From Fimbriosthenelais zetlandica (taxonomy: Eukaryota), in contig OZ365110.1 in the NCBI GenBank assembly GCA_977030845.1, positions 45,198,001-45,262,000 of the forward strand: 64,000 nt of DNA, written 5' to 3'. Below, piece after piece: positions 7,205-58,278 of this stretch. The notes below the pieces were generated by a model that searched no databases, was not told the origin of the DNA, and was given only the letters and a program-made list of their open reading frames with translations. The position numbers and the translations under genes were made by a program. Position 1 is the first letter of the stretch; every line of letters starts with the position of its first letter.

Positions 7205-7988
7205 TTATGACCGGAGGTCCAGCACTTCCTGCATGAGTGGCTGTATACCCTCCGGGTTCACCTTGAGGAGGACTTGTGAGTGTTCCTCATTCAGGTTACG
7301 AATGTCCGTCAGTTTCATGAGGAGTTTGGGGTACATGTTCCGGGCAACATGGTTAGGGTACCTGGTCTCAAGATAACGCTTGAGAAGCATGGAGTAGCGC
7401 TCCTGCTCCTGCCACACCAGGTCCTTGTTGAAGAGGTTGGGCCGGTCTGGCGAAAAGAGCGACACAATGAGCAGTAGGATGAGTGTGGGCTGGTCTGCTT
7501 CAAGATCGACCGCCAGAGATTTGACAAAGTTCATGTGGTCCTCAAAGAGGCCGCCCTCGGCGTTTCTCAGCTGCTCCATGCTCATGGCACTCGTCTCCTC
7601 TTGGTCCCCGCCCTCCAGGAAATGCTGCTTCTCTTTGTCAAAGGTGATCACCGAGCGGAGGATGAGCAGCTCGATGGAGCCACCCTTTAGTAAGGAGATC
7701 TGGTCGGCTTGTGGCAGCGCTTTGAAGGATTTCACTTTCTTGGCCATGTCGATGACTCGTCGCACGGAGATCTCGGCGATGTTCACAAGGTCGCCCATGT
7801 TACAGGCGTTGGAACGGGGCAGTTCCTTCTCCATGCTGATCTCCAGGGACTGCTGATAGGCCATCTTCAGTTCATCGATGAGTTCTATTTCCTCGTATGT
7901 GAGCTCGGTTTGTGGGGAACCAGCGGTGTCTGGAACTGTGGGAACTGTGGACGACGATGAGGAATGGTCCATCTGCTCCGGCTGGACC
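7205..7988 (-). CDS. HR96: HR96/NR1J-like nuclear receptor, last coding exon (ligand-binding domain + stop)
   Basis: The 255-aa ORF has LBD signatures ISVRRVIDMAKKVKSFKALPQADQISLLKGGSIELLILRS (helices 3-5) and a C-terminal AF2 PLMQEVLDL. The acceptor TTTAATTTCTCCAG|G at 7989/7988 needs a phase-2 upstream exon, which matches the 8343 donor. Stop TAA is at 7205-7207. Confidence 0.95.
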
Positions 7989-21694: not shown

Positions 21695-23634
21695 AGATAG
21701 AGAGGATAGGAGACAGGAGATGGACAGAAGAAGGGAGAGCGAGAGAGAAAGAGGACAGAAGCGGTAGAGATTAAAGACAGAACCAGGCTGTGTGGTGCCG
21801 GCAAGCTTATGACGAAGCTCTCTTTCCTCTCGTCGAGGTAGCTCAGTGTACGGGTTGATAATCTTCACAATGGCGGCGAGCATCGAGTTAAATATGGCTG
21901 CTCTTCATGTACTCTACACAGCTCATCTCTTCAAGGCAATGTGACCACACCTTCCCTTGCAATTCCATTTATTGATGTTTCCCGACCCAATCATTAGCAT
22001 CATCTTCTAAGGCAGGCCTTAATGCATGTGATTAATAGAACCATACTATAAAGGCATGTAGGCCTATATATGTCAATGGGGATCATCATATATGATCTAC
22101 ACATGCAGGTGGTGGACAGGTATTAATGTATGTATATATAGGTAACATTAAGGATAATTGGGGGTGGGCTTCACCAGTCAACCTGCTCTCACCTGGCCAT
22201 CAGAGCTGTGTATATTACTCACCAATTGCCTGTACACATGGAAATATATGACAGGTGCGCAGCGGGTGCCGTGTAACTTACAGGCTTTTGTATTATATGT
22301 ACAATATACATACACCAGGACCACATGCATAGGTTGATATGGAAACAATAATTAAACAGCTATATAAGCAATCACGTCAATATGTCAAGAAGGGTGGTTG
22401 GCTACTCAATTTAGACTGTGAATGAAGGCTTCCTAAGTCTAAAAGATACCGATTGGGGATTTTTCCCACGGAGTTTCTCATAAAGTGTTTAGATAATTGT
22501 AGGTAATATGTATGTGGAGGTTGGGAGTGTACAATAGGTTACCGCCACGCTGTGAGATCAGAGGTTGAAGAAATACAATACCTCACTCATCAGGATACAC
22601 AGGCTTTTTACGCATCAAAGTGTAGAGCTGATTCAAAGCAATATTTGAAACATTAAAAGCTGGCTCATATAATTCCCAATAAGTTACCTAACAAATGGCC
22701 TTCAAAGGCTGGGGTTCAGGGCTCGCCAACTTGCTCAGTAAAAATTGCTCAGAACTCTAAGCATTTTTCCCACCTATGAAAATGGCATTTACTGGAAAAC
22801 CATTAATCTTGAATATTTCTGTCAACTAGCCCCAAGTGGATGATCAAATGTTTTCTGCTTTCCTATTTTAACCGAGACTGTGGCAGAAGTCAACTAGATA
22901 CAGGAGCTTCCCGCATAATCAAGTGGACAAGCAGCGCCAGGGTATCAAGATAATACTGCCATCTAGTGACTGTTTACCGCTTCAATGTGCTTTACCTTTC
23001 TGAACTCAAGTAGAAAGGCCATAAACACCCATATACTGCGGCAGTAAACTTCAATATCAGTCATAATTGCGTCATTATGAAGCAAAGGCGAAGTATGGCA
23101 AGGAGGAGTGCCTAACTGAAGGTTATAGTATAAAACCATACGCGCGTCTAGAGCATACTAAAATAAATATGTTTTTGAAACACTATCCTAACTAGTTGAC
23201 TTGATCAATTTCCTTAAGGTCATTTGAGAAATACATATGTAGAATGGATTTCCTAAACACAGTATAAAATTTATAGTAAATTTCCATATCAATTACTTCA
23301 GACAAAGGTAGCAGCCATACCTTTCATGTAGCCATTTTCTATTTCATTAGACTTACAACTTTTTTTTTAGATTTTTAGATTTTTTTTAGAAGAAAGCCAA
23401 GCATACATTGATAACTTCCAGGTGCGATTTTCTCTCATATTTCTTTTTTAAGAGGGGAGATGATTCCCAGAAGATTTAGTTCATTGCAACGTGAGGAATG
23501 CACTTTACATCCCATGACCTACTGGAACCCTTAGCCCGGCCAGCAAATCAAATACTCACCGCTCACCAGTTAAGATAGAGAAACATAAAACAAGAAGATA
23601 AGAGAAAAGAGAATGGAGAAGAAATACAACTTAC

Positions 23635-23801
23635 CTGTTTTCTTCTATTTTCTGTCTTTTCCTAGCCTTTTCTTCTTCTGTCAGGATGTATTCTTTTCGC
23701 ATGCCTATCTCAAAGCATTTTCGCAATCGACACCGTTTGCAAAATCTGCGATTTGATATGTCCATCTTGCACTTCTCGTCATAGGGGCACTTGAAATAAT
23801 C
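23635..23801 (-). CDS. HR96: HR96/NR1J-like nuclear receptor, second zinc-finger exon (167 nt)
   Basis: Acceptor TTTTCTTCCCCAG|GAT and donor AG|GTAAGT. It encodes DYFKCPYDEKCKMDISNRRFCKRCRLRKCFEIGMRKEYILTEEEKARKRQKIEEN, the second C4 finger plus C-terminal extension, closely resembling Drosophila HR96 as I recall it. Confidence 0.95.
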
Positions 23802-28112: not shown

Positions 28113-28411
28113 CAAGCCTTTTGGTGCATTCCGTCGGAAGAACGCTTTGCAGGATTCACAAGAAATGGCATCGAAGTTGTATCCAAGTGCTCGGTCACCA
28201 CACACCCCACATATTTTGTCCTCTTTGTTTTTCCTCGCTCGTCCTGGTCCTTGTGTCGGGGAGGGGACACCTCCAGGTCCCATGGAGCCTGGAGGCATGC
28301 CTCCCGAGGCCCCGAGGCCTTCCAGGTAGGGCCCGTCCACCTCGACCTTGATGTCCATGTCAAGGTGATGAGGCGGCAGGTAACGCCCCACAGGCTCGCC
28401 TATATGTATCC
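28113..28411 (-). CDS. HR96: HR96/NR1J-like nuclear receptor, A/B region + first zinc-finger exon (299 nt)
   Basis: Acceptor TCTTTATCTTTTCAG|GG and donor TTG|GTGAGT. It encodes [33 protein letters not shown], whose ESCKA P-box is diagnostic of the NR1J group. The exon starts in phase 1, so an upstream exon exists (or translation starts at the internal MDIKVEV). Confidence 0.95.
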
Positions 28412-35960: not shown

Positions 35961-38900
35961 GTTCAGAGGTGTGGATAAGAACCGTAAGTTAACCGTCCAT
36001 CTCCAAGGGGAGAAACCCGGTTGGTAGGCGGGATAATTCAGAGATTTAGGACTCCCTTACCACGCTCATAACGACAGTTTGTGACTTGAGGAAGGTGAGC
36101 AGGGAACCAGCTTTTAAAGGTCGTGGCCAATCCACGACGCAACACCTTCATAATCAGCGCTAGGCGGACGCTGGGGCGGCGCCCTGCTTTATGTTGGCAT
36201 AAATTCCCACTCAGCGTGGATATGAATAATAAATAGTTCCAACGCATTTGCTGTTGGTCAATCACAAAACATATTAGAGCGAGGAACGTGGGGGAAGCGG
36301 TCGTCCGATTTATGGGCGTCCCCGAGCTGTGTTCGCTATACGAAGCGTCTCAGTATATCAAATTAGTCCCAAGGAAGCCACATAAAAAACGGGGAGGATC
36401 GGGCGCAGGTTAATACACAGCGCGCGAGCAGGAAATTAGGGGAGGGCCTATTCCCGCCGAGAGGGGTTGAGTAGACATGTGGAGTGAAGTGACGCAAATA
36501 AAAAAAAATACAGTACATATAAAGGCATACTGTGCCCATGTATGTATCACATACAAATATGTATTTAATATATACGAATATCAGACAACAGTCGGGTTGT
36601 ATTCCTCACAATAAATAATTATGAAGAATAGCTCAATACATCTATTCTGCCATTCATAGTTCATCACAGGGAATTCTATAGGCATCACACTCTGCCTGAT
36701 GGCTTCCTTAGGCCAAATATAAAATGCCATACTTCTATATTCCATGCTATTCATTTTTGGGTCTCAATTACCAAACCATTAAAAAAAGAAAGGGTTTGAA
36801 CTGGAGATAAACCACTTGATTAACTACATGTATACCTGAGGTGGTCACTGATACAGACACCTGAAGTGCACAGCACCTTAATTGTGTAGCTCTTCAGGTA
36901 TATCAGTCTCTGAACTAAGCACTCCGGCGGTATATGCCATGGAACTATAGATCTAGCTGTGACGACACAACAATATATGAATATAACATATAAGAAATGA
37001 TATGTTATAGACGTGAATAGGTTATAATGCTAAAATGGTGTATGTGTATATCATATATCAACGCGTAGAGGCAGCAAGAGTGGAGCAATCGATAAGTGAA
37101 ACTGGGGAGGAGGAGGACTAGGGGAGGTAGCCCAACGAGCCAGGCACAACACACCAAGCAATCCCAGCCTGATCAGCCAAGCGCGAATACCTAAGACGAT
37201 CTTATATGGTTGAGAGAATCTGGCGCCGTTCCCAGGAGTTTTTATTCTCTCCTCAAAGGAGAGGGACAGGGAGAGGGAAAAGGAGGGGAGAAGGATGAGA
37301 GGAGAGATAGGGAAGAACAAGATATGAGAGATGCATTCATAGCTCTAAGATGATCAGAACTAAAGGATTAATTCAAAAAGATTAACAGAAAAGATGAGGA
37401 AGAACGAAAGAGAATGGCATGTGAGGAAAAGGTAGAAGAAGAGGAATGGTAAGGGTAAAAGAAAGAGATAACTTTGATAAATGTATAGTTGAGATATAAA
37501 GAACAAAAGGCAAGGGAACAATGAAGAGGAGAGGGGGGTGGATGAAGTGATAGAGGCAAGGTATTCCAGCCGAATGAGAGCTCTTCTCTAACAAGAGGTA
37601 TTAAAAATAGACGCTAGGGTGCGCCTGCTCACAGCCTCTTCATATGTTTTTAATGTAGCTGCCTCTTTGATGTGCATACACACTGTTTTGAAAGCAAGCC
37701 AGGCCTAGAAGCGAGGGTAAATTATGGAGCGGAAGACCTGGGATTGGACCAAAGACCCGACGGGTGCATATGATTAGCGTTACAGCAATGAACAAAGTCC
37801 TTATAAATAGATTTGGCAACTCATTGAAACAAATCAGTGCAGTGATTTTTCTCATTTCCGCAAATCAACCCTTATACCAACCATTAAAGCGATGTAGCCT
37901 CTCTATGGTTCTTGTTACTAAGGCTAGGTACAGGCTGAAAATCAAATCTACAAGAGGAATTCATGTAATTTTATGAATTCAGAGAGGAGCAATTGTACAC
38001 ATTTTTGCAAAACCGGAGAGAGCTTTGTTGCCGACAATCGAAAAAATAATTACATTGTATCGTCTTGAATTACCAGGGAAATGTGAAGTTTGTACTATTC
38101 ATGTATTTTCAGAAAATCAGTTCGCATTGACATAAAATATCACAGGGATATGGAACCAACAATGGACCGTAGTGACAGACCCATGCCAAGATGTAAAGTC
38201 TTATAGATGCTTTATGATTAATGCTTATCAAAAGCAATGTGAAGTCTGGATATTCTGGACAAAAAAAAACCTCTGGTATTTTCAACGAGGAAATGGCCTG
38301 GAAAACTCAGCCTCGTGGAAGAATCGGCGACAGCTGTGGAACGAGGCAGCCTGCCGCCAACTTCAACAACACCTAAAAACACTCACACTTTCCGTGACCA
38401 AAGCTAATTTTCACATTTTTTTCGCTTTTTTCATCATTAATTCATTGTGATTGGGTCCTTTTTGGTGTTATTACCACAAAATCGGTCTGCTCCTCAGTAG
38501 CATGTGCGAAAGGAAATGGAGAAAAAAGGTTTGGTGATTAGGACGCAAGGTTGGTTTGGGGCAAGGGAGATTATGAATTTATAGTGTGTTGGGAAGGGGA
38601 GAGTGTTAAAAAGCTTGCGATGAAGGTGTGTATGGGGGGAAAGTTGGAGAACAGCCTGTCCTAGATAGCAGAGATCCAAGAATACCACCACGCATCATTT
38701 CCTATGGTTCACGAGCCAGATCAAGCCCCTCTGAAGTTTTCAGGGATTCCAGTTAAAAAGGGAAATCATGAATGGAACTCATTTCTTTAGCAAGATGGGC
38801 GGGGCTATACAACTGTATTTTGGCTGTACCAACGAAGAGAATGAAAGTTTATTATTGCTTTCAGGGAATATACAGTTTGGTGTGATAAGGGCACCAGCAT

Positions 38901-41900
38901 GTAGCATATGTTGCACAGATGTATGACTATTATGTTGATATATTCGAATTAAATCCGTTGGAAGTATTGGCTTGAAGTTTGTAGCCTATAGACATACCAT
39001 ACAAATGCATTTAAATTGAGGCGTGGCAGGATATTAACTAACTAAGAGGACGTTAAAGTATATATAATACCATTACTGTACATGGAAGAGAAAGTCCACT
39101 TTTTTGCCTATCAATTATTCCGCACAGTGTCAGAAAACAATTCGCCAAGGAAACCAGGATGTCGTCAATCGTCGCGAATGTCGTAAAATGGTGCTGATGT
39201 CGTATTAAAGACGAAACAAACATTCAAGAGATGAATAATACTCTGATGAGCATTCGTATAATAGGACGATAATTCTTATCAGCAAGATATCAATATGGGA
39301 GGAAAATAATGAGAAATGGCCATTAGAGCGGAACAAGTATGTGTGGCGAACCATTGCAGACTGTATATTAAGTAATAATGCAATGGAAATGAGCAAATTT
39401 CGAGTAGGAATTCAAGACTGATGCTGCTTCAAAATATTTTCATCCCCGTTAAACAAGGTCCCCATATCTTAGGGAAGGTTATATCAGAGCATAATATACC
39501 AGTAGGTAATAGTTATAGCTAGACATGGTGCTCCCAGTAAAGCATAAAGATCTAATCGGGTTATACATACCCGATGCACACATGCCTCATTGGCAATAAA
39601 ACACAGCTGGTCTGGCTGGTTTTAAGGCCATGACTTGGGACTCTCTCTTCTGACAGAAGCAGGGCATTCCCCCCACCCCTCACTCTCACTCCCAGGCTCA
39701 CAGGGGTCTCACGGCAAACCAAGCGAGATGGCCCACTTTACCAAGTCACCCAACCCCTGTCCCTACAAAAAAATCTTCCCCCAACAGCCACTGGTGCTGT
39801 TTCCATCCCTTGGTCCAAACTTCTCTGCACGGCCTCGGAAAGATGATATAAGACAAGAAAGATACCAAAGGTGTCTGGATGGTGAAGTCAGGCGTATTAA
39901 TGAAAAAAAAACCACAAAGGGATTAATTTCAAAATGGGACAAAAGAAAGGGAACAGCAATATTGGGAGGGGAAGTGGGTGGAGGGGGAAGAGCTAGAGAA
40001 AGAGAACTTGAGAGACATACACGTAGTCAAGCAATAGACTGTAATATGAACCCTACCAACACCTCAGTGTTTAGTCGGTGGAGTAACAATATTTGCAAAA
40101 TATGACACCTGGAAAAATATTGCAGTATAATGGCCCTGAACCACACTTGCACATTCACACTTTCTGCACTGAACATCCCAAAAATTAAACTCTTCCAAAT
40201 TCTGGAGCTGACGCTCAGGAAGCTGGTATAAAAACCTTTAAAAATGAATAGGCCTTACATTCGAGAATATTGTGCACCTAGATGTAAGTGTTCAAATCTG
40301 CAATAGAAGCCTAACAGGGAATGACGCAGTATGATTCAAGCTAAGATAAGAAAGACTGATAATGGCTGCTACCAATAACTCCAGTGCAGAGTGCCAATGT
40401 CCGGTCGTTAAAACAATAAAATTGATCCGTCCTTTTTATCAAAGACCAGATATTATATGATTACCAATCAAAAATATTTATACACTAATTTACTTCAATT
40501 CCAACTTCGGACCCCTATACTTTTCGTCCTTTATATAAATCCAATATTAAATCATTTAAATAAGAGAAATCCATATATAAGGGTCAAATATTACAGGACT
40601 GTGGGCATCATATTGTATATAATCTGTGTTAAAACTCAGGAGGATAAGGTTAGGCTAATCCACGCATGTTCATGATGTGCAAAGCAAACACACCTAATCC
40701 ACCAAGAGTGCTAGTTGCTATAATGGCCAATATCCCTGTTACATACCGGGAACAGTTGACGTGGCCAGGAAGGTTAAAACCTCACAGGGCCACTTGTTCT
40801 CTAACCCGTGGGCTTGTTAGTTTTAGCGATGGCCTCTAGGCTTGACCAGTTCCAGACAGAATATATAGCTATTCATGTTGAGGTGTGTTTTGGTCTCATA
40901 GAGTAGCCACTAATTTATGGCATTATAAATAGTAACATTAGAGACACAAAATGAACTAACTCGGGTCAGTTTGTTTTGGACCTTAAATCACATTATGTAT
41001 ACACAGGATAAATTGTACTTTGTGTTGTAATGAAGCTAATGTGGAAGCCATTGAACCCCGAATAATGAAAATTTTCCAGTAGAAGACCATTTTTTAAACA
41101 CAAAACCAAAGTTTGTTGACCTCAAAAACCAGTTGAACTGAGATAATTAGAAACAAAATATATAGAGCAGACGTCAGACCAGCCATGTATATCAGTGGCC
41201 AGTACTGTGACGCTTGACCACCATCATCATCTGGACGCCTCTGGATGTATATATAACCCAGGATTTTTGGTTTCTACTCTCGGCCACAGTCTACTCACCC
41301 TGGCTGTCTTCCATACATCCCAGGGGCCGCAACTCTTCTCCCCTCCCAACTCCCCATACCTGACCCTGACGTGACCTACAAACCACGCCGACCTTGACCT
41401 GCAGGTGACCCCGAGAAAGTTAAGTCTATGACAGGAGCTGTGTGAGAGAGAGATACCCTGGCGAGATGTGCAGCAACAGACATGAGCAAGACACATGTTT
41501 TTCTCCACGGGGTTAGATGTTTCCTTTCCTTTCCTTTGTTCGGAAAACATGGGTTTAGGCTACTCCAAACCACACGACCCCTTCAAGAATGGTCCCTTTT
41601 GGACATATCACCAACCAAGGGCATAACCCTCAAATACAAAGTCAGTCTTGATGTATACGTCTTCCCCAGAAATAATCAGTTATTTTATTATCATTACTTG
41701 TGCAGTTTCGGGCCGCTTTTCAAAGACGTGAAATTTAGTGGGGAAGAGAAAGAAAGCCCTCAGGGTCAAGACCTCGGTACTGCAGTAATGAGTAAATACC
41801 AAGGACTTGGAGGAAGTTCCAAACCATTCATCTTGCCTTTTACATTCAACCTTTTTCTCCAGGATGAAACAGACACGGCCATTGGCTTGATTTACTCATG

Positions 41901-45671: not shown

Positions 45672-48600
45672 CAACCACTTATCGATCCGAGTACACAACA
45701 GTGGTAGGACATCATAGGAAAGGAATGCAGAAGGTTCATAAAATTTTATATCTCATTCTTTATGACTAGAGGGAACACTCGACCAAGTGTTCTTTCTCTA
45801 GCAGCAGTTATCAGATGTTAAAATAGTGGAATTGAAATCAAGCCCACCTCAGCCAAGAACAGAGATAGATGTCCACCATTAGATTTATATTGTACTTTGT
45901 TTATGTGTGCTGGAGTGCTATCATCAATGTACCCCATAAATTTCTGAAATAATATACGATTAATATGATTGTGCCTCCTCAAATGACCAAGTCAATCGAT
46001 CAATAGACGAGCAATATCGCAGACAATTCTTAAATAGTTATCTAAGAAGAGATGATAACGATTTCCATAAACCGAAAGTAGGCTTAACGAATCCATATCA
46101 CAATTGTCATTGTTGTGCCCCCTCTATAGCCAATCAATACATGCGAATAAAATATTGACTAGTAATGCTTTCACAATCAGTAAGCACGTTGGCTAAGTTG
46201 AACACGTACAGTTATATGGGGGTCCAAGTTGCAGGTCTATTGTTGGTACTTTCTGATAAGATGTCCCATTTAAAACGACCTTACCATGTACCACACACAT
46301 GTATGCAATCTGATTCAGGCGCCACAACACAATATTTGCCAAATCCTGGTACTCTGATCATTACCATGTACACATACAAATTATGTATCTAAAAAGCTCT
46401 TCGAAACAAACGTTATTAACGTATTCATAGTATTGACCTTCTTTGCATAAAATCTGGGCGAATGTACGTGAACTGTTCAACTGTTACATGTACATTGTAA
46501 TATACATTACACCTTCGGTTTTAATATAAGAATTGACAAGACACGTGATGCTAATCTGGCTGTTCTAAAAAAAAGTGAAGCACTTAACATAGGTCGATTC
46601 AAGGTGTACAGTACATTAGTTTCATTAGTTCTTTGGCACAGGACACAATAGCAACCAGGAATAATCCTTAACTAATTCCTAAAGCAAATATTGGATGGCT
46701 CAGCCATTTATACAGGAGCCACAGGGGTGTCAAGGTGCGAGGCAGACATATATTAGGTGAACCTGTAAGATAAACGTTCAAGAAACAAAGATGCTGAAAA
46801 GAGGACAAAATAATAATGTGATTCTAAACAGAGAATAATAAATATTATATACTATTCATTTTACTTTCCTGGTTATTATGAATTTATATGGCATGAATCT
46901 GGTCCATTTCTATATAAGTTATGGTTTTGGAAAGAATGATTGATGAGCCATGATAAAAATAACAATATGCCTAGTAAAAATTTAATTTTAATGAATCTAA
47001 TGCAGCTTATGGAACCAACCTCTACTTCCTGCATTTTGAATTGGTCCGCGGAACATATCCCTCCCAATCTTCATTCCAAATGGCATGAATCTGTTGTTTA
47101 GAGAGGCATGGGTGTATCTATATACATGTAAACCCCTTAAGAGTAGAATCCTCGCCCCGGGGGCTTTTCCAGCGTCTCTAACAATGACCAGCCACAACAA
47201 CAATAATAAAGCCCAATCCTCTCCTCTCGCTCACTCAATGGCCGGATTGGGGTCGTGCATCACATGTAATCCTCTTTTGAAACCTTTAAGTGAACATGCT
47301 GGGTTCTGGCGAGGTAGTTGAGCGATAATTGGCAGTTTCAGCTTTAAGTGCTCATTACGTCTGAATGTGTATTGAAAATCCGGGTGTGTGTAAAGGGGCC
47401 CAGACGATAGGTCACTTGGCGGTTTTGGTGGCAAAAGGAAAGCAATCAACCACTAAAGGAAGACAACAAAGTGACCAATAGTTGCTTGTGGGTGTTTATT
47501 GTTGTCCTGTGTTGCTGTAGGGTTGTATAGGGATGGATTAGGATATGTAATATGGGTGGATTTGTATGGCGGTGACGGTTAGTCAGTGGGAGGAAAAATA
47601 GACGGAATCAGCAGCGCGTACTTGAGTACACAGAGGTTATGTCCGCGCCATCCAGAGAACACTCCAACAACCAGGTCCTTCCTGGCTTCACTCTAATATA
47701 CCATCCCCCACCCTGGAGGAGAGAGGCATGTGGGTCAATGGCTTCCTAACCTCTCCACACTGGTCTATTATTCCTTACAGATGTGTGTATTGTGAACTAG
47801 TCCGTGTACTCAACACTCTTTCTTGTTGCTACAGCCTTCTCCTACTCATTAACTCCAGTGCTCGTAGATCACCTGGAGGGGGAGGGTTCAGCGTTCCTCC
47901 AGCGTTCAATGGGCGCCAAAGCAGTCAGTGAAGCCAGCGTTGCCTGGTTAAAACCCTGGTGTCTGGGTGACAGTTAAAGCTGTCTTATGAAGCTGTCAGA
48001 GGACTGTCAGACCGTTGACAGCACCCACTGTCACCTCTGGTGTCTGGCCAGCGTTCTCCCGGCGTTAGCTACCGCCAATACAAGTCTCCTGAGTTGGGGG
48101 GAGAGGAGTATAACACGAGGCTATGCGGCCTCGAGTCCCAAACCCAGCCACCAGAGAATCTATGTCAGACGGGGAACCTTCCTCTGTTATAGGTCTAATA
48201 CCACAGGTCTGCTGCTTTGTTCGCCATACATACACCTACCCCTCCTCCTGCGTCTCCCCATTAAGCTAGATCCTGTCTTAATGGGTAGATGACCCAGTCA
48301 AGTGACCAATGGTCTCCTGGAGGAGTTCACAGTCATGCACTTCCTCCAGACAGCTGAAGAACTGGTTTTGTTGTAAAAGGGTTGGCGAGGGCAGGCAGCA
48401 GCACTAGCACTCCTCCACCTCCTCTTCTAATAGTATTCTCGTACTATGGAGCCGCCGAGCGGTTTGCACTCGCTGTTTGAGGCTGATTCTGTAGCCAGGA
48501 GAGGAGAGAGAAGGGAGAGAGCTTATTGAATGTTGTCCCTAGCGCGGCGATGGTGAGGTGGCCCTATGCCGCTTAGTACAGTGCACGCACTTAGGTGCAT

Positions 48601-51600
48601 TGGCCTGGTGTTGGTGGAGATGGTGGTTCTGTATGTGTGAGTGTGTGGGTGACCAGGGGCACTCCAAATAAAATGGATTGTCATGCCGTTTAGGATCCCC
48701 CCCAAATTCGTTTTTTTCTGAGAAAGGGGAGGGGTGGAGGGAGAAAGTATCTTCATAATATCTAGATACAATTTCTGATGGAACTGGTAACCCATTTTCA
48801 TGAAAAAATATTTTATTGGAAAAAAATGGACTTCAACTCAAAATATGTACCTTTTCACTTGTACCGTAAAGTAAAATAGCTTGTACGAAGAATGGTACCT
48901 CTTTTCTTGGCAAACATGCCTGTTTTGAAATTTCATTTCAAAGGAGTTACTAAATTCACCCCTCTTTGATATATTTTGTTATACACAGTGGGAAGCGAGA
49001 CTAACGACTTTAAAGCATCCCATTATCTTTAAAATTGGGAACGCAATGCAACCCACTTTGGTTCCCAGTGCCCCAGGGTGGGAGGGTGGGTGAGTGATGG
49101 AGCTGTATGTGTGTGTGTTGTCCAAGTGTGTCTGTGTGTTGGAAAACTTGCACACACCGCCCTATATAACGATCACACACAGTGAGTTCTGTGTTTGGTA
49201 TACTGAGGTCGTATAGTTCCAATTCGAGATAAATCTTGGAAATAACAGGGATGGAATGGTGGAGTGGTGTGGAGGAGGTACTAAGGGGTGGGAGATGTTG
49301 AAGGCCCTGTATATAGAAAGCTTTGGGACGGTGGTATTATAGAAGCCTCTCAGCTAGGGGCAGGTTTGCTTCGCAGCTCTATACCGGCGGATGACCTCGA
49401 TTCACCAACCGTAATTAATAGGTCTCCTTCTCATAACAGAGGCTTAGCCAATGGGATACCACTCCTTCCGTGCTAGCTAAACACCATGCCAATCCATACA
49501 CGAAATTAATGTGGACAGAGAACCCATAAACACGTAATACCTAGCTTCAATATTACTCATGCATGAAATGATAAAAATCCAAAGTATGCATGTCAAGACA
49601 GGAGAAAATAAAGTGGTTGTAACATAGATTTTATCAGCAATTTACCTCAGGAATATTTCACTAATTTGAAACTTTTTTCTGAAGAAAGTTTTTACTCCAT
49701 ATTTCCAATTTGAACAGGTATGTAACAATAGATGGTCTTTACATTGTAGTTGAAAGTACAATATAACCACGCCATATTACAAATCAACAATATCTCACAC
49801 ACAGAAGCTAATGCCACATTAAAACATGCAAGAATGGCTTCATACTTTTCAGTGAGTCAACCCATTCAGGTATGAGATCCGCACATGCTTGTTTCATTCG
49901 TTCACGGAAGACTGAACAAGCAATAATAAGCAAACTTCGGGAGAGCTAAATAGTTATTGGAAGACCGAATATGCCATATTTTCACCCTACAGAATTATAT
50001 CATTAATGGTGAAAACGTAACAAATCGAGTCACAATGACGGGTTTTGGTCATGGCTTAGTGGAGCTCAGATTAACACTGCCGGCTACTTAAGTAGCTATT
50101 GGGTGTCAATTCCATGTACATCACAATGAGGGACAGAGAAACAAAATCATAGACAATCAACCGAGCAATCTGAAGACATTCCCTGAGAAAGAGATTATCG
50201 GCTCAGTCATTGTACAAGGCGGGTTCCTTGAAAGCCAATTCTTCAGGATAAATAGCCCATGTCATGGTTTCAGGCCCCTTTTCCCCATTTTCCCTTGAAG
50301 CCATTTTGACCAATTACATCATAGCTTCTCATCCACGGCATTAGCAGTCCTGAATGGCGCAAACCCGATTACACCCTGTGTCACTTAACGTTTAGAATAG
50401 AGCTCTTTTTTGCTCCAAACTGTGAGCCTTTGTTATGCTGCACTAAAGGCAGGTTGACATAGAGTATTGCTCATTCACTCTCCAGCCCAGAGCCTCTATC
50501 CCGCCAGCTCTCGCTGCACGTGACCTGAACCGAACTCGGCCTGAGGTCACATGACCAGTGTCCTCACGTAACATTGCGGCAGTACAGGGTATTACAACCA
50601 GTTACAACGGTGAGGTATTTACCAGATTCCACTCTGGGGAAAAGAGCGTGACTCTGATCTTGTAATACAACGCGAATTACGAGTTTATTAGCACATATTG
50701 CGTAAAAGCCAAACCGCCAGACTGTTTTGTTGTCTGATGGTTTGTCTGGCGCATTATGGTATGCCATGTTTTGACGGGTGTCAGCTATAACCATGCAGCA
50801 CAGACACAAATTTTAATCTACTCCATGTGCCGAGCACTCGAATGTAAATTAGCCATGATCAGGAGTAGAAAGTTCAAACTTCGCCAACACTAGGTTATCC
50901 TGGGTTTTTAAATGTTTCTTTTTCTTTGGTTCAGAATACCAAAGTAGAACACAATGTTTTGGAGGACATGCATGGTGCAATCCTGTATACAATCACTTCC
51001 GCATTGGACATTTTTTGTGTGAATCGTATATATGTACATTCATCATGACATGTTAAATTTTTACGACATGACTTTGGCACATTAAATATTAATCTTTCTA
51101 TCAATACAGATTTATCTGATAAAGTGTATATATGACCTTGAGCGGTCATATGCGGGCATATCACAATGGTTTACACATTTTTCAAATAATGCTCTAGCGT
51201 CTTTGTTTAAAAAGTGCCAATCAATGAATAGTGCATGTAAGCCTATATAATAATAGAAATGTATAAAAGTGTATTTCATACACTTAGTTTTTGTTTGAAA
51301 TATGGACAAAGATCACCAGCCACATGACCCAAAAGGAAGTAAACCTTATAGTCACATCATAACTAGGCTACAGGCCTACATGTGGCCATGTATACAGTAT
51401 CCATGTACCTAGGTCAACCCTCTATTCTGGCTATATATGATACTGTTGTCCTCTATAGAGCTAGCTGTCCAAATCTCTATACACAAAATGGTCATGTGAA
51501 CAGCGGGGGCAGTGAAAGTGTTTGGTGTGGGTGAAGGTGAAGTGTGTAGGCGAGAGATCGATGGTTATGTGGAGGGGTTGGGGGATGAAGCCAGCCTAGT

Positions 51601-51835: not shown

Positions 51836-51875
51836 CACTCACCTGAAAAATAAGAGACATCATTTTAACAACAAA
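51836..51875 (-). other. recursive-splice-site-like motif (3'ss fused to 5'ss): GTCTCTTATTTTTCAG|GTGAGTG
   Basis: Pyrimidine tract + CAG immediately followed by a consensus GTGAGT. The junction is at 51843/51842, with about 35 nt upstream free of AG. Confidence 0.5.
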
Positions 51876-52081: not shown

Positions 52082-54689
52082 CCTCAGTCACCAAAGGTTA
52101 GGTTTACTTGAAACCCAGGTCAAAGGGGTAGAGGGGTCTGTGGGAGGTTCTATGGACGGGATGGGTATTGCCTGGGGTGTGTATTCAGATGTGAGGGTGT
52201 CTGACAGGATGGGGAGGTGAGGTGGCAATGTTCAGGGTCAGCGATTGGTCAGAGACGCCAAAAAGATGTAGGTCTACTCTATACCGGAGAAGTGTCCCTT
52301 TCATATAATATTATTAATTAGTCTATGCTTAAATCATTTTACTCTAAGGTCTATGCTTAAAAGTCATCCATACTTTTATTTCAGATTTCGCAAGGGCCAT
52401 CACTTTTATCTTCTATTACCTCACATGGTATAAAACAGTGTCATGCAATACTGGTTAAAAGAACTCTTTAAAGGCTTGGAAAGTAAGTATCACTTTCAAG
52501 AGTCCCACATCATAGTCCTGTTCCTCACTACAGACTTCCAATGATCATCTCGTGGTGTCCAGTAGCACGTGACCCAGTCCGCAAATAGACGAGAGGTCAA
52601 TATCAGAGTTCAAGGTCAAAGGTTTCGACATCATCCTGCCCTGTTACTGTCTGGTATCTGGGCGGGGGAGAGGGGTGAGGGCATTTTGGGTAGCGGATAA
52701 AATCAAATCTAGAGGCATTTCGAGGAAAGTATCGTAATGTTCAAGAGGCATTATTTGTATAGGGGAGAGACTAGTCTGCAGTGTATGTTAAAATGGACAA
52801 TGATGATAATATGAAGAAGTGAGGGAAAGTTGGGGGCGATTACTCCACAAATAACAATATAGAGAATTTCTATTAGAGCTTAGGTCTACATTTTACTCTA
52901 AGATGAGAGTTAACAAGGTAATATAGGTAATGGAGCATATTAAGCATAAAATATGACTTTATTTGTGAGGGGGTGGGGGTGTTGTTGGCTAACTGGAGGA
53001 ATGTGTGTATTTCAGCCGCGTTCCACATTTGGAATGGGAGCCTCTAGGAGTCGCTCGGAGGTCAGTGGATGAGGCCCGGAACGAGGCTATAAAAGTCACA
53101 TCAAACGTGCATAACGAGCGGACAGCGGTATCTTCTACGGCCCGCTGATCCCCCCACCCCTCATACATCTAGACTGGCCACCTAGACTAGCTACAGTCAC
53201 TCTCATTTAAACACATTCCATCCCTATATACATAGCAAAAAAAAACAATATCCTTGAATAAAGTTACGTCAGCAAATAACAAAGCCAATCACTATCCCTA
53301 ACACCAAAACAGCGCACTATTAAAGAGGTCTTATTTGTGATTGAAAGACATCGATAGCCTATAGACAAAATATAATACAAGTCGGGCAAACTATTAGAAA
53401 AGACCCGTGCAAGTGTAAGTTCAATGTCAAGGGGGGAACTATCCTTTGCATGAAGTAAAGGCTCCTTATTTCTGGTTCGACTGTTTTACATCGTTTGTGC
53501 GGTAGGCAAGTGGACCTCTATTCTGTAGACATATCAATAGAAACAACCAGAATATTCTGGTTCAAATTTATACCCCAGCTCGAGTGACTCATCCCCAGTT
53601 AAACTAAATATCATGGAGGAATGACTCCATGAATGATAAGAACGTAAACGGGGTCATTTTGAAAAATAATAATGGGCATAACTGAAACACAGTGTCTATG
53701 TGCATGGCGGTGGGATTGGAATTATGAGATAAAGGTTTGAAACATTTTCATTTTTTGGACAAAAACGTTTTTTCACAATGTTTTATATACTTGTACATAT
53801 ACCATATTGTGAATGCCAAAACCTAATGGAAACGTTGCGGATTGAAACAAAAACATAGCCATTGGCATGCATGCCTCGCAACGTGTCTCAACCCTGGGTC
53901 GTTCCTGGCATATCTGCACTGACTACAGATAGGGCTAAGTAGGAAGGATCTTCCTTGATATCTACAATAAGAGACATTAAATCAGAGCACATGCCAGAGT
54001 CTGGTCGAGATAAGCTATCTGATAAGGCTGACTATGAGCCTCTTCGTTCAGAAAAATTAACTTAAAACAAATATGCCTTCTCCAGTTAAATTCTTCAGTA
54101 CATGATGCACAGGTGCAAAGTGACCAAAATGTTTATTACATTTGGCCCTCAACCATGCAGTCAACTATGCAAGACAGGACATAATTATGTCATCTTAAGA
54201 TGACCAGACCACCGACCAGCTTGACCATTTATCCTCGACTATAATGCCAGAGTCCCGGTTTGACCAGTGGCGTGAAATGACTGACCTCGCCTTAAACAGA
54301 CTGTGTCCATGATCAGTCACTGGCTCACTGTACTACATTTAGATGCAGGTTATTATAACTTCTCCACCTTCTAGGGAATATCAAGATCAATTCCAATTTC
54401 AAAATCTTGAACGGGAATATGAAGGAGATACAAGAGAATGTTCTAGTCACAAATATGAAACCAAAAGGAAGATTGCCCAACCCAAAAGGAAGAGGGCAAT
54501 CCTTTTGCTGAACAGAACCAAATGAAATAGGGTCTAGATCGAAGTACCAAAGTTCCAATTGTGTTGAATGTTTTTGTACAACATGGATTGAAGAGCTGTG
54601 ATTAGCCGAATACCAAATCTATATCCCAGACCATGGAGCTAAATATAGTAAGAGCATCACAAAAAGCTGACGGAGCCAATAATCAACCT

Positions 54690-57478: not shown

Positions 57479-57560
57479 CACTCACCTGAAAATATATAAA
57501 GGAATATGCATAAGAACATGAATTTCAAGGACATAAAATCATTCAAGTCAGTAAATAAAA
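57479..57560 (-). other. recursive-splice-site-like motif: TTCCTTTATATATTTTCAG|GTGAGTG
   Basis: The junction is at 57486/57485. About 80 nt upstream are AG-free and contain a branch-point-like TACTGAC. Confidence 0.55.
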
Positions 57561-58278
57561 CCATAGATCTATGTTATGACTACCAGCAATTAAGTTACAG
57601 AGAGGTGTCCAGTGGAGGTCCTAGATTCCATTCATGAAGAATATAAACTAGTCATCTGACGTAAATATTTAATTATTAACTGTTTAATATTTCAGATAAA
57701 ACTAACAGTCACACATGGCTGACTCAGGGCAATTTTCCAACATCAGCTTTAAAGTGAGAAGCAATAAAACAGAATAGATATATTATTAAAGACTAGAAAA
57801 AACGTGTCAAAGAACACCGGCAGCGAATCATTTTATGATTCATCTTCAAAATCTTTTGTACTTTGAAGTTTCATATTAAAATTGATTCGACAAATAAAAA
57901 TTTCTCTCATAAATGAATGGCGTCTCTAGACGCATAAATAATAGAAAATTTTTAATCGATAAATATTATAACAGGGAGCCTATAGATCCACTGATTTTGG
58001 TAGAAAATATAAAACAGATTAAAAGTAATCAAATTTTAACATATACTACATCTGATTCAAAATAAGTATTTTGATTGCTCATTCTGTGCACATTTTGGAT
58101 GAGCGCTTTTGCAATGGATCTCGTTGGATCGTGACGCGAGTGATTTAGTATCGCGAGACCTGATTTGATTAAGTGGTCAGTTCCATCCAATGATCGTAAA
58201 GTCCGATTGATGCCACCCTAGTTCAGGGGTGGCCATGTCTCCATAGCTGACCCCTCCTCATCCCCAGTTCACCCCAAA

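What the first reader, a model, noticed from the sequence alone, without database searches (positions are those of the whole stretch)
57479..57560. Recursive splice site candidate B with the same 14-nt core and a long AG-exclusion zone
Seen: TTTTCAG|GTGAGTG again, identical over 14 nt to site A and on the same strand, 5.6 kb further upstream. It is preceded by about 80 nt with no AG and a TACTGAC branch-like motif. The flanks are otherwise unrelated to site A, so this is not a simple duplicated repeat. I found no equally strong site elsewhere on the minus strand apart from true exon borders. Inference: the transcription unit starts above 57.5 kb and uses serial recursive splicing.
Basis: partly seen in the sequence, partly recalled or inferred. 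Interest (0 to 1): 0.72.

Follow-up and report, generated by a model that had tools for sequence, protein, structure and literature searches.

The report
Candidate recursive splice site upstream of HR96
An intron-end signal fused directly to an intron-start signal lies 10 kb upstream of a nuclear-receptor (HR96) gene in a probable annelid. It is too well built, and too well matched in a distant relative, to be chance, so it is probably a fly-style "ratchet point" for stepwise intron removal. No RNA data could be examined, and no upstream exon is proven.

Summary
TTTTCAG|GTGAGTG lies at 57479-57492 on the minus strand and is identical to site A (51836-51849). It follows 83 nt without AG and a TACTGAC motif. 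Flanks are single-copy and unrelated to A.

- **Chance is unlikely.** The genome holds 30 exact copies, so 0.005 same-strand pairs this close are expected.
- **Relative.** A relative with saturated introns carries the same 14-mer on the gene's strand at the collinear place (expected 0.002-0.04).
- **Genome-wide.** TTTCAG|GTRAGT sites form same-strand pairs within 40 kb far above chance (16 against about 2.7). Opposite-strand pairs do not (4 against 2.7).
- **Scoring.** A matrix trained on other loci ranks the relative's site, B and A first among 1,878 AG|GT sites.

- The conserved start-codon exon of the host gene (HR96) lies at 47086-47020, downstream of both sites, so a distal promoter is required and not shown.
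- B and A lack the short cryptic exon donor seen at 12 of 18 comparison sites.
- Site A is not kept in the relative.

No RNA run was listed. The scan has already reported recursive-splice arrays elsewhere in this genome.

Verdict: a probable (about 0.5) new member of a known kind, unverified by RNA.

The parts
57479..57492 (-). Site B core TTTTCAG|GTGAGTG. The acceptor AG is at 57487-57486 and the regenerated donor GT at 57485-57484. T is present at -4 to -7.
57488..57568 (-). AG-free zone. The previous AG is at 57570-57569, 83 nt from the site's AG. The stretch is T-rich, with 15 of 20 pyrimidines next to the CAG.
57547..57553 (-). TACTGAC branch-point-like motif, with its branch A 62 nt upstream of the AG.
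57510..57514 (-). CTTAT, a second branch-point-like motif at about -25, the usual distance.
51836..51849 (-). Site A, the same 14-mer. Its AG-free zone is 34 nt and 13 of 20 upstream bases are pyrimidines.
47020..47086 (-). HR96 start-codon exon ('1c'), encoding MPFGMKIGRDMFRGPIQNAGSR(G). Its donor is GAG|gttggt. It is conserved in the relative and joins exon 2 in frame.
28113..28411 (-). HR96 exon 2 (first zinc finger). Acceptor ctctctttatcttttcag|GG, donor TTG|gtgagt.
23634..23801 (-). HR96 exon 3 (second zinc finger).
7205..7912 (-). HR96 last exon (ligand-binding domain, Pfam PF00104) with its stop codon.
53060..53132 (.). Conserved non-coding block lying between A and B. It holds a perfect TATAAAAG on the + strand.
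50521..50579 (.). Conserved non-coding block between A and exon 1c, with AGGTCA/TGACCT nuclear-receptor half-sites.

Best explanation
Site B is a zero-nucleotide recursive splice site (ratchet point) on a minus-strand primary transcript that starts upstream of 57.5 kb. That transcript is most likely a distal-promoter form of the HR96 pre-mRNA.

Proposed steps, all inferred:
1. An upstream non-coding exon is spliced to the AG at 57487-57486. The branch point would be CTTAT at about -25 or TACTGAC at -62.
2. The join puts that exon directly in front of GTGAGTG, which regenerates a donor.
3. That donor is then spliced to site A, 5.6 kb downstream.
4. From A it is spliced to the acceptor in front of the start-codon exon at 47.09 kb, or to exon 2 at 28.41 kb.

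What is shown: the anatomy of the site, its non-randomness, recurrence of the core in a relative, and the genome-wide behaviour of such motifs.
What is inferred: the transcript, its start, and the order of the steps.
For: 1. **Motif quality.** The acceptor and donor are near consensus, T is present at -5 and -6, and the AG-free zone is 83 nt.
2. **Pairing with A.** The genome holds 30 exact 14-mers against 8 for the reversed control. The expected number of same-strand pairs within 5.65 kb is 0.0055.
3. **Relative.**
   - I walked 92 kb of a relative's contig (ERZ25767047, ctg38945).
   - It shows collinear conserved blocks matching window 53.48, 53.1, 50.55, 47.05 (exon 1c), 40.1 and 37.67 kb.
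   - It also carries one exact TTTTCAGGTGAGTG on the gene strand, upstream of the 53.4 kb block, as B is.
   - That site lies 22.9 kb before exon 1c, against 10.4 kb here; other intervals in the relative are 1.5-2.3 times longer.
   - Its flanks are unalignable.
   - The expected number by chance is 0.002 for the 14-mer and 0.04 for the 12-mer class.
4. **Genome-wide counts.** TTTCAGGTGAGT occurs 249 times against 62 for its reversed control.
5. **Genome-wide pairing.**
   - On C1, adjacent TTTYAGGTRAGT hits within 40 kb are 13 same-strand and 3 opposite. The reversed control gives 4 and 3.
   - On C1, C10 and C11 together, TTTCAGGTRAGT gives 16 same-strand and 4 opposite pairs against about 2.7 expected for each. 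For the same-strand excess P = 3e-8.
6. **Comparison sites.** Eighteen of 20 clustered sites fetched have pyrimidine tracts, AG-free zones of 32-170 nt and mostly unrelated flanks. Twelve of the 18 have a cryptic-exon donor 18-54 nt downstream, against 7.6% at random positions. Fly-type recursive splicing therefore very probably operates in this species.
7. **Independent scoring.** A matrix trained on those 18 sites ranks the relative's site, B and A first among 1,878 AG|GT sites.
8. **Strand and composition.** The site is on the strand of HR96. The minus strand is T-rich in 18 of 19 4-kb bins from 48 to 124 kb. The comparison sites show the same sense-strand T excess.
9. **Possible upstream exons.** Short exon-like units with strong splice sites lie on the minus strand at 87-100 kb.
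10. **Alternative first exons elsewhere.** Molluscan HR96 transcripts carry alternative 5' exons.
11. **Literature.** Fly ratchet points keep the acceptor|donor core while their flanks drift. One fly ratchet point lies in a 5'UTR intron (PMC8605326). Fly segments range from 2.6 to 63.6 kb (10.1101/006163).
Against: - **No RNA evidence.** No run was listed, and read laying would not take the relative's run ids.
- **Both sites are outside the minimal gene.** The conserved start-codon exon is at 47086-47020, downstream of both sites. It may have its own proximal promoter: a CCAATTATCGCTCA block is shared upstream of it in both species.
- **No distal exon identified.** None was found by conservation or by homology to other HR96 N-termini.
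- **No cryptic RS-exon donor.** B and A have no good donor within 160 nt downstream, whereas 12 of 18 comparison sites do.
- **Site A is not conserved.** It has no counterpart between the matching conserved blocks in the relative.
- **A possible opposing promoter.** A conserved TATAAAAG on the + strand at 53.1 kb could drive transcription in the opposite sense across B.
- **Interrupted tract.** The pyrimidine tract of B contains three A residues.
- **Isolated sites.** No further TTTCAG|GTRAGT site occurs on the minus strand within about 2 Mb.
Confidence: 0.5

Rival explanations
1. Chance juxtaposition. The 14-mer is a rare but non-functional sequence in non-transcribed DNA upstream of HR96, and the copy in the relative is a coincidence.
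For: - The broad 12-mer class TTTYAGGTRAGT is not enriched over its reversed control (652 against 743), so many single hits must be chance.
- B and A lack the cryptic-exon donor found at most comparison sites.
- No transcript is shown.
Against: - Only 0.0055 such same-strand pairs are expected genome-wide.
- An exact third copy sits on the right strand at the collinear place in the relative, where 0.002-0.04 is expected.
- B, A and that copy are the three top-scoring of 1,878 AG|GT sites under an independently trained matrix.
Confidence: 0.12
2. B (and A) is the donor of an alternative non-coding first exon whose start site lies one to three hundred bases upstream. Only GTGAGTG would be used, and the acceptor-like tract in front would be incidental 5'UTR sequence.
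For: - HR96 genes of molluscs use alternative first exons.
- TGAGTCA (AP-1-like) and ACGTCA motifs lie 241 and 177 nt upstream of B.
- No RS-exon donor lies downstream.
- Exon 2 and perhaps exon 1c have acceptors that could receive such an exon.
Against: - T at -4 to -7, an 83-nt AG-free zone and branch-like motifs are acceptor features that a first exon does not need.
- The same acceptor half is kept in A and in the relative's copy, while nothing else upstream is shared.
- No common promoter motifs occur upstream of B, A and the relative's site.
Confidence: 0.12
3. A DNA-level regulatory element. The core contains CAGGTG, an E-box of the Snail/ZEB/E-protein type, and would act as a transcription-factor site in the HR96 upstream control region, which is full of conserved enhancer-like blocks.
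For: - The region from 37 to 53.5 kb holds six collinear conserved blocks. Several carry recognisable factor sites, such as AGGTCA half-sites at 50.5 kb.
- The core is conserved without its flanks.
Against: - All three copies are on the gene's strand.
- The conserved part extends over TTTT and AGTG, which an E-box does not need.
- The other conserved blocks are 55-76 nt long, not 14 nt.
- The genome-wide excess of pairs is strictly same-strand, which points to an RNA-level signal.
Confidence: 0.08
4. A true recursive or cryptic splice site that belongs to a separate minus-strand transcript, either a long non-coding RNA or the 3' part of an upstream gene, rather than to HR96.
For: - Exon-like units lie on the minus strand at 87-100 kb, and no coding exon lies between 57 and 124 kb.
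- Exon 1c may have its own promoter.
- The minus-strand T excess runs to at least 124 kb.
Against: - No such gene is identified.
- No Rfam family matches anywhere in the 124 kb.
- The sites lie only 4.75 and 10.4 kb from exon 1c, whose upstream AG in this species could serve as the final acceptor.
Confidence: 0.13

Closest known systems
Drosophila zero-nucleotide ratchet points (Burnette et al. 2005, cited from my own knowledge; Duff et al., bioRxiv 10.1101/006163)
   Same: - Acceptor and donor are juxtaposed as (Y)nCAG|GTRAGT.
- TT is present at -5 and -6.
- The site is on the sense strand.
- The core is kept while the flanks drift.
- The 5.6 kb segment lies inside the fly range of 2.6-63.6 kb.
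- One fly ratchet point lies in a 5'UTR intron (Bx; PMC8605326).
   Different: - The host intron and its upstream exon are not identified.
- The organism is a probable annelid, for which I found no report of recursive splicing.
- The pyrimidine tract is interrupted by A residues.
- There are no junction reads, sawtooth coverage or lariat data.
RS-exon model of recursive splicing (Sibley et al. 2015 and Joseph et al. 2018, as summarised in PMC8605326)
   Same: A strong regenerated donor directly follows the acceptor. Twelve of 18 other arrayed sites in this genome show the expected cryptic exon of 18-54 nt.
   Different: B and A have no good donor within 160 nt downstream. They would have to be recognised without exon definition, or through a weak donor.
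Other predicted recursive-splice arrays in this same genome (earlier scan notes s1-196126, s1-188344, s1-207628, s1-223626, s1-207629)
   Same: The motif class and the same-strand arrangement are the same. I saw the C10 27.05-27.09 Mb array independently.
   Different: Those arrays lie inside giant introns between coding exons, with spacings of 10-37 kb. B and A lie upstream of the first coding exon and are only 5.6 kb apart.

Membership tests
Zero-nucleotide recursive splice site (ratchet point) | Juxtaposed strong acceptor and strong donor, (Y)nNCAG|GTRAGT | tested here: met
   TTTTCAG|GTGAGTG. It ranks second of 1,878 AG|GT sites under a matrix trained on 18 independent sites.
Zero-nucleotide recursive splice site (ratchet point) | TT at positions -5 and -6, as in 99.5% of fly ratchet points (10.1101/006163) | tested here: met
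   T is present at -4 to -7 in B, in A and in the relative's copy.
Zero-nucleotide recursive splice site (ratchet point) | Prominent pyrimidine tract and a branch point about 21-36 nt upstream | tested here: inconclusive
   Fifteen of 20 bases are pyrimidines, with three A residues. CTTAT lies at about -25 and TACTGAC at -62, within an 83-nt AG-free zone. Branch use cannot be shown without lariat reads.
Zero-nucleotide recursive splice site (ratchet point) | Lies in the sense orientation inside a long intron (11 kb or more in flies) of an expressed gene | tested here: inconclusive
   It is on the strand of HR96 but 10.4 kb upstream of the conserved start-codon exon. No upstream exon is proven. 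There are only exon-like candidates at 87-100 kb.
Zero-nucleotide recursive splice site (ratchet point) | Evolutionary conservation of the acceptor|donor core | tested here: met
   The exact 14-mer lies on the sense strand at the collinear place in a relative with unalignable flanks. Orthology is inferred from the order of conserved blocks only. Site A is not conserved.
Zero-nucleotide recursive splice site (ratchet point) | Cryptic RS-exon: a second donor some tens of nt downstream (PMC8605326) | tested here: not met
   No donor scoring 6 or more lies within 160 nt of B or A, and the best scores 4.5. Twelve of 18 comparison sites have one at 18-54 nt, against a random rate of 7.6%.
Zero-nucleotide recursive splice site (ratchet point) | Exon-to-ratchet-point junction reads, sawtooth read density, recursive lariats | not testable with these tools
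   No run was listed for this genome. Read laying accepts only ids from that search.
Nuclear receptor HR96 / NR1J (host gene) | C4 zinc-finger DNA-binding domain plus ligand-binding domain, with closest named homologues annotated HR96 | tested here: met
   Pfam PF00105 and PF00104 match. Best named hits are HR96 of Ridgeia (uniref name), Lingula, Patella and others at 65-76% identity. The spliced reading frame is open.

The most novel reading that the evidence does not exclude
Fly-type zero-nucleotide recursive splicing operates in an annelid, which would make it ancestral to protostomes at least. Here it would serve a previously unseen distal promoter of the xenobiotic-sensing receptor HR96, through ratchet points that work without a cryptic RS-exon. 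That would be a variant of the exon-definition rule proposed for flies and mammals.
Probability: 0.3. Interest if true: 0.6.

Novelty: new member of a known kind. Interest (0 to 1): 0.42.

Why it matters
Recursive splicing has been documented by RNA data in flies and vertebrates. I found no paper in the searched library describing it in annelids or molluscs.

If B is used, three things follow:
- It adds to the case that ratchet points are an old bilaterian device for handling long introns.
- It shows that HR96 has a distal promoter more than 10 kb upstream of its start codon.
- It gives a test case for recursive sites that lack a cryptic exon.

On its own it is one more candidate in a genome where the scan has already flagged several stronger arrays, and it remains unverified by RNA.

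Tried and rejected
- **RNA evidence.** I did not try further.
- **Repeat origin.** Rejected. The flanks of A and B are single-copy. A 10-kb query returned not even itself, a tool quirk.
- **Close relative (Logan runs ERR14368248/9; non-coding DNA 70-86% identical).**
  - Only the LBD contig could be fetched.
  - Non-coding ORFs are too poorly conserved to find the contig carrying B by protein search.
- **Distal exon hunt.**
  - No conserved block lies upstream of 53.5 kb apart from a marginal 28-nt match at 61.1 kb, E = 0.72.
  - There is no paralogue of exon 1c and no match to alternative N-termini of other HR96 proteins.
  - Nothing in Rfam matches.
- **Own-species or near-species full-length HR96 protein.** Not found.
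- **Composition skew in the relative.** Uninformative, about zero.
- **Promoter motifs upstream of B, A and the relative's site.** No common pattern.

Full report
**1.
- The 14-mer TTTTCAGGTGAGTG occurs exactly twice in the 64-kb window. Both copies are on the minus strand, at 57479-57492 (B) and 51836-51849 (A). Dinucleotide shuffles give 0.07 matches even with one mismatch allowed.
- Upstream of the CAG of B the previous AG is 83 nt away. Only 1.8% of AG-to-AG gaps on this strand are 80 nt or longer.
- TACTGAC is present at 57553-57547, 62 nt before the AG. A CTTAT lies at about -25.
- A and B are the only YYNCAG|GTRAGT matches on either strand. The only other minus-strand CAG|GTRAGT is the true donor of an exon at 23.6 kb.
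- The two sites share nothing beyond the core, and both lie in single-copy DNA.

**2. The host locus.**
- The window carries an HR96 (NR1J) nuclear-receptor gene on the minus strand. Pfam zf-C4 and Hormone_recep both match. The best named relatives are annelid, brachiopod and mollusc HR96 proteins at 65-76% identity, so the organism is probably an annelid.
- The exon with the first zinc finger (28411-28113) has a strong acceptor, ctctctttatcttttcag|GG.
- The peptide [13 protein letters not shown], which lies upstream of that exon's internal Met, is conserved in ORFs of five other annelid-like contigs. One of them has Val in place of that Met. The true start codon must therefore lie further upstream.
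- Comparison with a relative revealed a 67-nt coding exon at 47086-47020 (MPFGMKIGRDMFRGPIQNAGSR, phase 1). Its substitutions fall mostly at third codon positions, and it joins exon 2 in frame.
- Both candidate sites therefore lie upstream of the first coding exon, A by 4.75 kb and B by 10.4 kb.
- Whether exon 1c has its own promoter is not settled. A 14-nt block, CCAATTATCGCTCA, is shared about 215-245 nt upstream of the ATG in both species. In this species an AG directly precedes the conserved part, but in the relative it does not.

**3. Is it more than chance?**
- The genome (447 Mb) holds 30 exact copies of the 14-mer, against 8 for the reversed control. With 30 copies, 0.0055 same-strand pairs within 5.65 kb are expected.
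- I walked 92 kb of the orthologous contig of a relative (ENA ERZ25767047, ctg38945; LBD exon 79% identical in DNA; introns 1.5-2.3 times longer).
- Non-coding DNA there is unalignable except for six short collinear blocks. These match window 53.48, 53.1, 50.55, 47.05 (exon 1c), 40.1 and 37.67 kb.
- In the 54 kb upstream of the relative's exon 1c there is exactly one strong juxtaposed site. It is the same 14-mer, on the gene's strand, upstream of the 53.4 kb block as B is, and 22.9 kb before exon 1c. It has a CTAAC about 26 nt upstream and no flank similarity to A or B.
- The chance expectation for that copy is 0.002 for the 14-mer and 0.04 for the 12-mer class.
- Site A has no counterpart between the matching blocks.

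**4. Does this genome use such sites?**
- TTTCAGGTGAGT occurs 249 times against 62 for its reversed control. TTTCAGGTAAGT occurs 194 times against 133.
- The looser TTTYAGGTRAGT is not enriched (652 against 743), so many single hits are chance.
- The hits are arranged non-randomly, though.
  - On contig C1, 16 adjacent pairs lie within 40 kb where 5.3 are expected. Thirteen are same-strand and 3 opposite.
  - The reversed control pattern gives 7 pairs, 4 same-strand and 3 opposite.
  - Merging the two TTTCAG patterns on C1, C10 and C11, and leaving out one segmental duplication and one tandem array, gives 16 same-strand pairs against 4 opposite. About 2.7 are expected for each, and P = 3e-8 for the same-strand excess.
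- Of 20 clustered sites fetched, 18 have 13-19 pyrimidines in 20 and AG-free zones of 32-170 nt. Their flanks are mostly unrelated apart from short similarity around the site in one array. Two are a duplication.
- Their flanks show a T excess on the motif strand, with mean AT skew -0.029 and 16 of 19 negative.
- Twelve of the 18 have a good donor 18-54 nt downstream, against 7.6% at random positions. This is the cryptic RS-exon layout described for flies (PMC8605326).
- Fly-type recursive splicing therefore very probably operates in this species. Earlier notes of this scan reached the same view at other loci. I saw one of their arrays, C10 27.05-27.09 Mb, independently.

**5. How B compares.**
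- A matrix trained on the 18 independent sites scores the relative's copy at 24.9 and B and A at 23.7 each. These are the top three of 1,878 AG|GT sites on both strands of 237 kb of sequence from the two species. The next scores are 18.9 and 13.2, and both of those are also on the minus strand upstream of B.
- B meets the fly criteria of a juxtaposed consensus, TT at -5 and -6, and a conserved core (10.1101/006163).
- B fails one criterion. Neither B nor A has a usable donor within 160 nt downstream.
- The 5.6 kb spacing is inside the fly range of 2.6-63.6 kb but below the 14-37 kb seen in this genome's other arrays.

**6. Is the minus strand transcribed across 57.5 kb?** This is unproven.
- In favour:
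  - The minus strand is T-rich in 18 of 19 4-kb bins from 48 to 124 kb, as it is in the known HR96 introns.
  - Short exon-like units with strong acceptors and donors lie on the minus strand at extended coordinates 99744-99706, 94688-94641, 87315-87271 and 86962-86918. Only one comparable unit lies on the plus strand.
  - Molluscan HR96 transcripts show alternative first exons.
- Against:
  - No distal exon could be confirmed by conservation or homology.
  - No Rfam RNA lies in the 124 kb.
  - The conserved block at 53.1 kb contains a perfect TATAAAAG on the plus strand. That could mark a divergent promoter reading antisense to B.

**7. Verdict.**
- The best explanation is a recursive splice site on a minus-strand transcript that begins upstream of B, most likely a distal-promoter HR96 pre-mRNA (confidence about 0.5).
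- The rivals are:
  - a recursive site of a separate transcript (0.13);
  - the donor of an alternative first exon (0.12);
  - chance (0.12);
  - a DNA-level E-box-type element (0.08).
- It is a new member of a known kind, in a phylum where I found no published report. It is weaker than other arrays already flagged in this genome, because its host intron is not defined and it lacks the cryptic exon.

Noticed in passing
window 47020-47086 (minus): A previously unrecognised start-codon exon of HR96 (MPFGMKIGRDMFRGPIQNAGSR). The public Ridgeia HR96 model starts at the internal Met and so appears N-terminally truncated, because GIHIGEP... upstream of that Met is conserved in several annelid-like contigs.
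   Followed up: yes
window 53060-53132 and 53426-53478: Two conserved non-coding blocks between A and B. The first holds a 23-nt identical stretch with a perfect TATAAAAG on the + strand, possibly a divergent promoter.
   Followed up: partly
window 50521-50579, 40082-40135, 37638-37702: Conserved non-coding blocks with recognisable factor sites: AGGTCA/TGACCT half-sites and TACGTG at 50.5 kb, TTGCAAAT at 40.1 kb, and ATCAAAG at 37.7 kb. They are likely HR96 enhancers.
   Followed up: partly
L004:5706-5744, L004:641-688, L003:3271-3315, L003:2918-2962 (minus strand; 23-36 kb beyond the window end): Four short exon-like units (39, 48, 45 and 45 nt) with strong acceptors and donors. Two begin with GTGA, like expressed RS-exons. 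They are possible 5' exons of a long minus-strand transcript.
   Followed up: partly
L003:849-860 (+ strand; G000:C10:45282849): TTTCAG|GTAAGTTTT on the plus strand with a 57-nt AG-free zone. It is the only strong juxtaposed site on that strand in the 124 kb.
   Followed up: no
G000:C1:4961850-5062948 (+): Five same-strand TTTCAG|GTGAGT sites spaced 14-38 kb apart. Three share 32-112 nt of local similarity around the site (L011-L013), suggesting that ratchet sites were duplicated within one giant intron.
   Followed up: partly
G000:C10:24137700-24209075 (-): Six same-strand juxtaposed sites within 71 kb, alternating between two sequence types at about 26-kb periodicity. This is either a tandem segmental repeat or a recursive array.
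   Followed up: no
genome-wide: The 17-mer CTTTTTCTCAGGTGAGT makes up about 30 of the first 100 Y9AG|GTRAGT hits, on both strands. It is a dispersed repeat family that inflates motif counts.
   Followed up: no
G000:C1:58457333-58475040 (L028/L029): A 1.7-kb segmental duplication (96.7% identical), 15.7 kb apart, that mimics a same-strand pair. The upstream sequence is not acceptor-like.
   Followed up: yes
relative contig, about 13 kb upstream of its zinc-finger exon (L032/L033): A 60-65 nt tandem repeat on the antisense strand, in which each unit carries cag|GTAAGCC.
   Followed up: no
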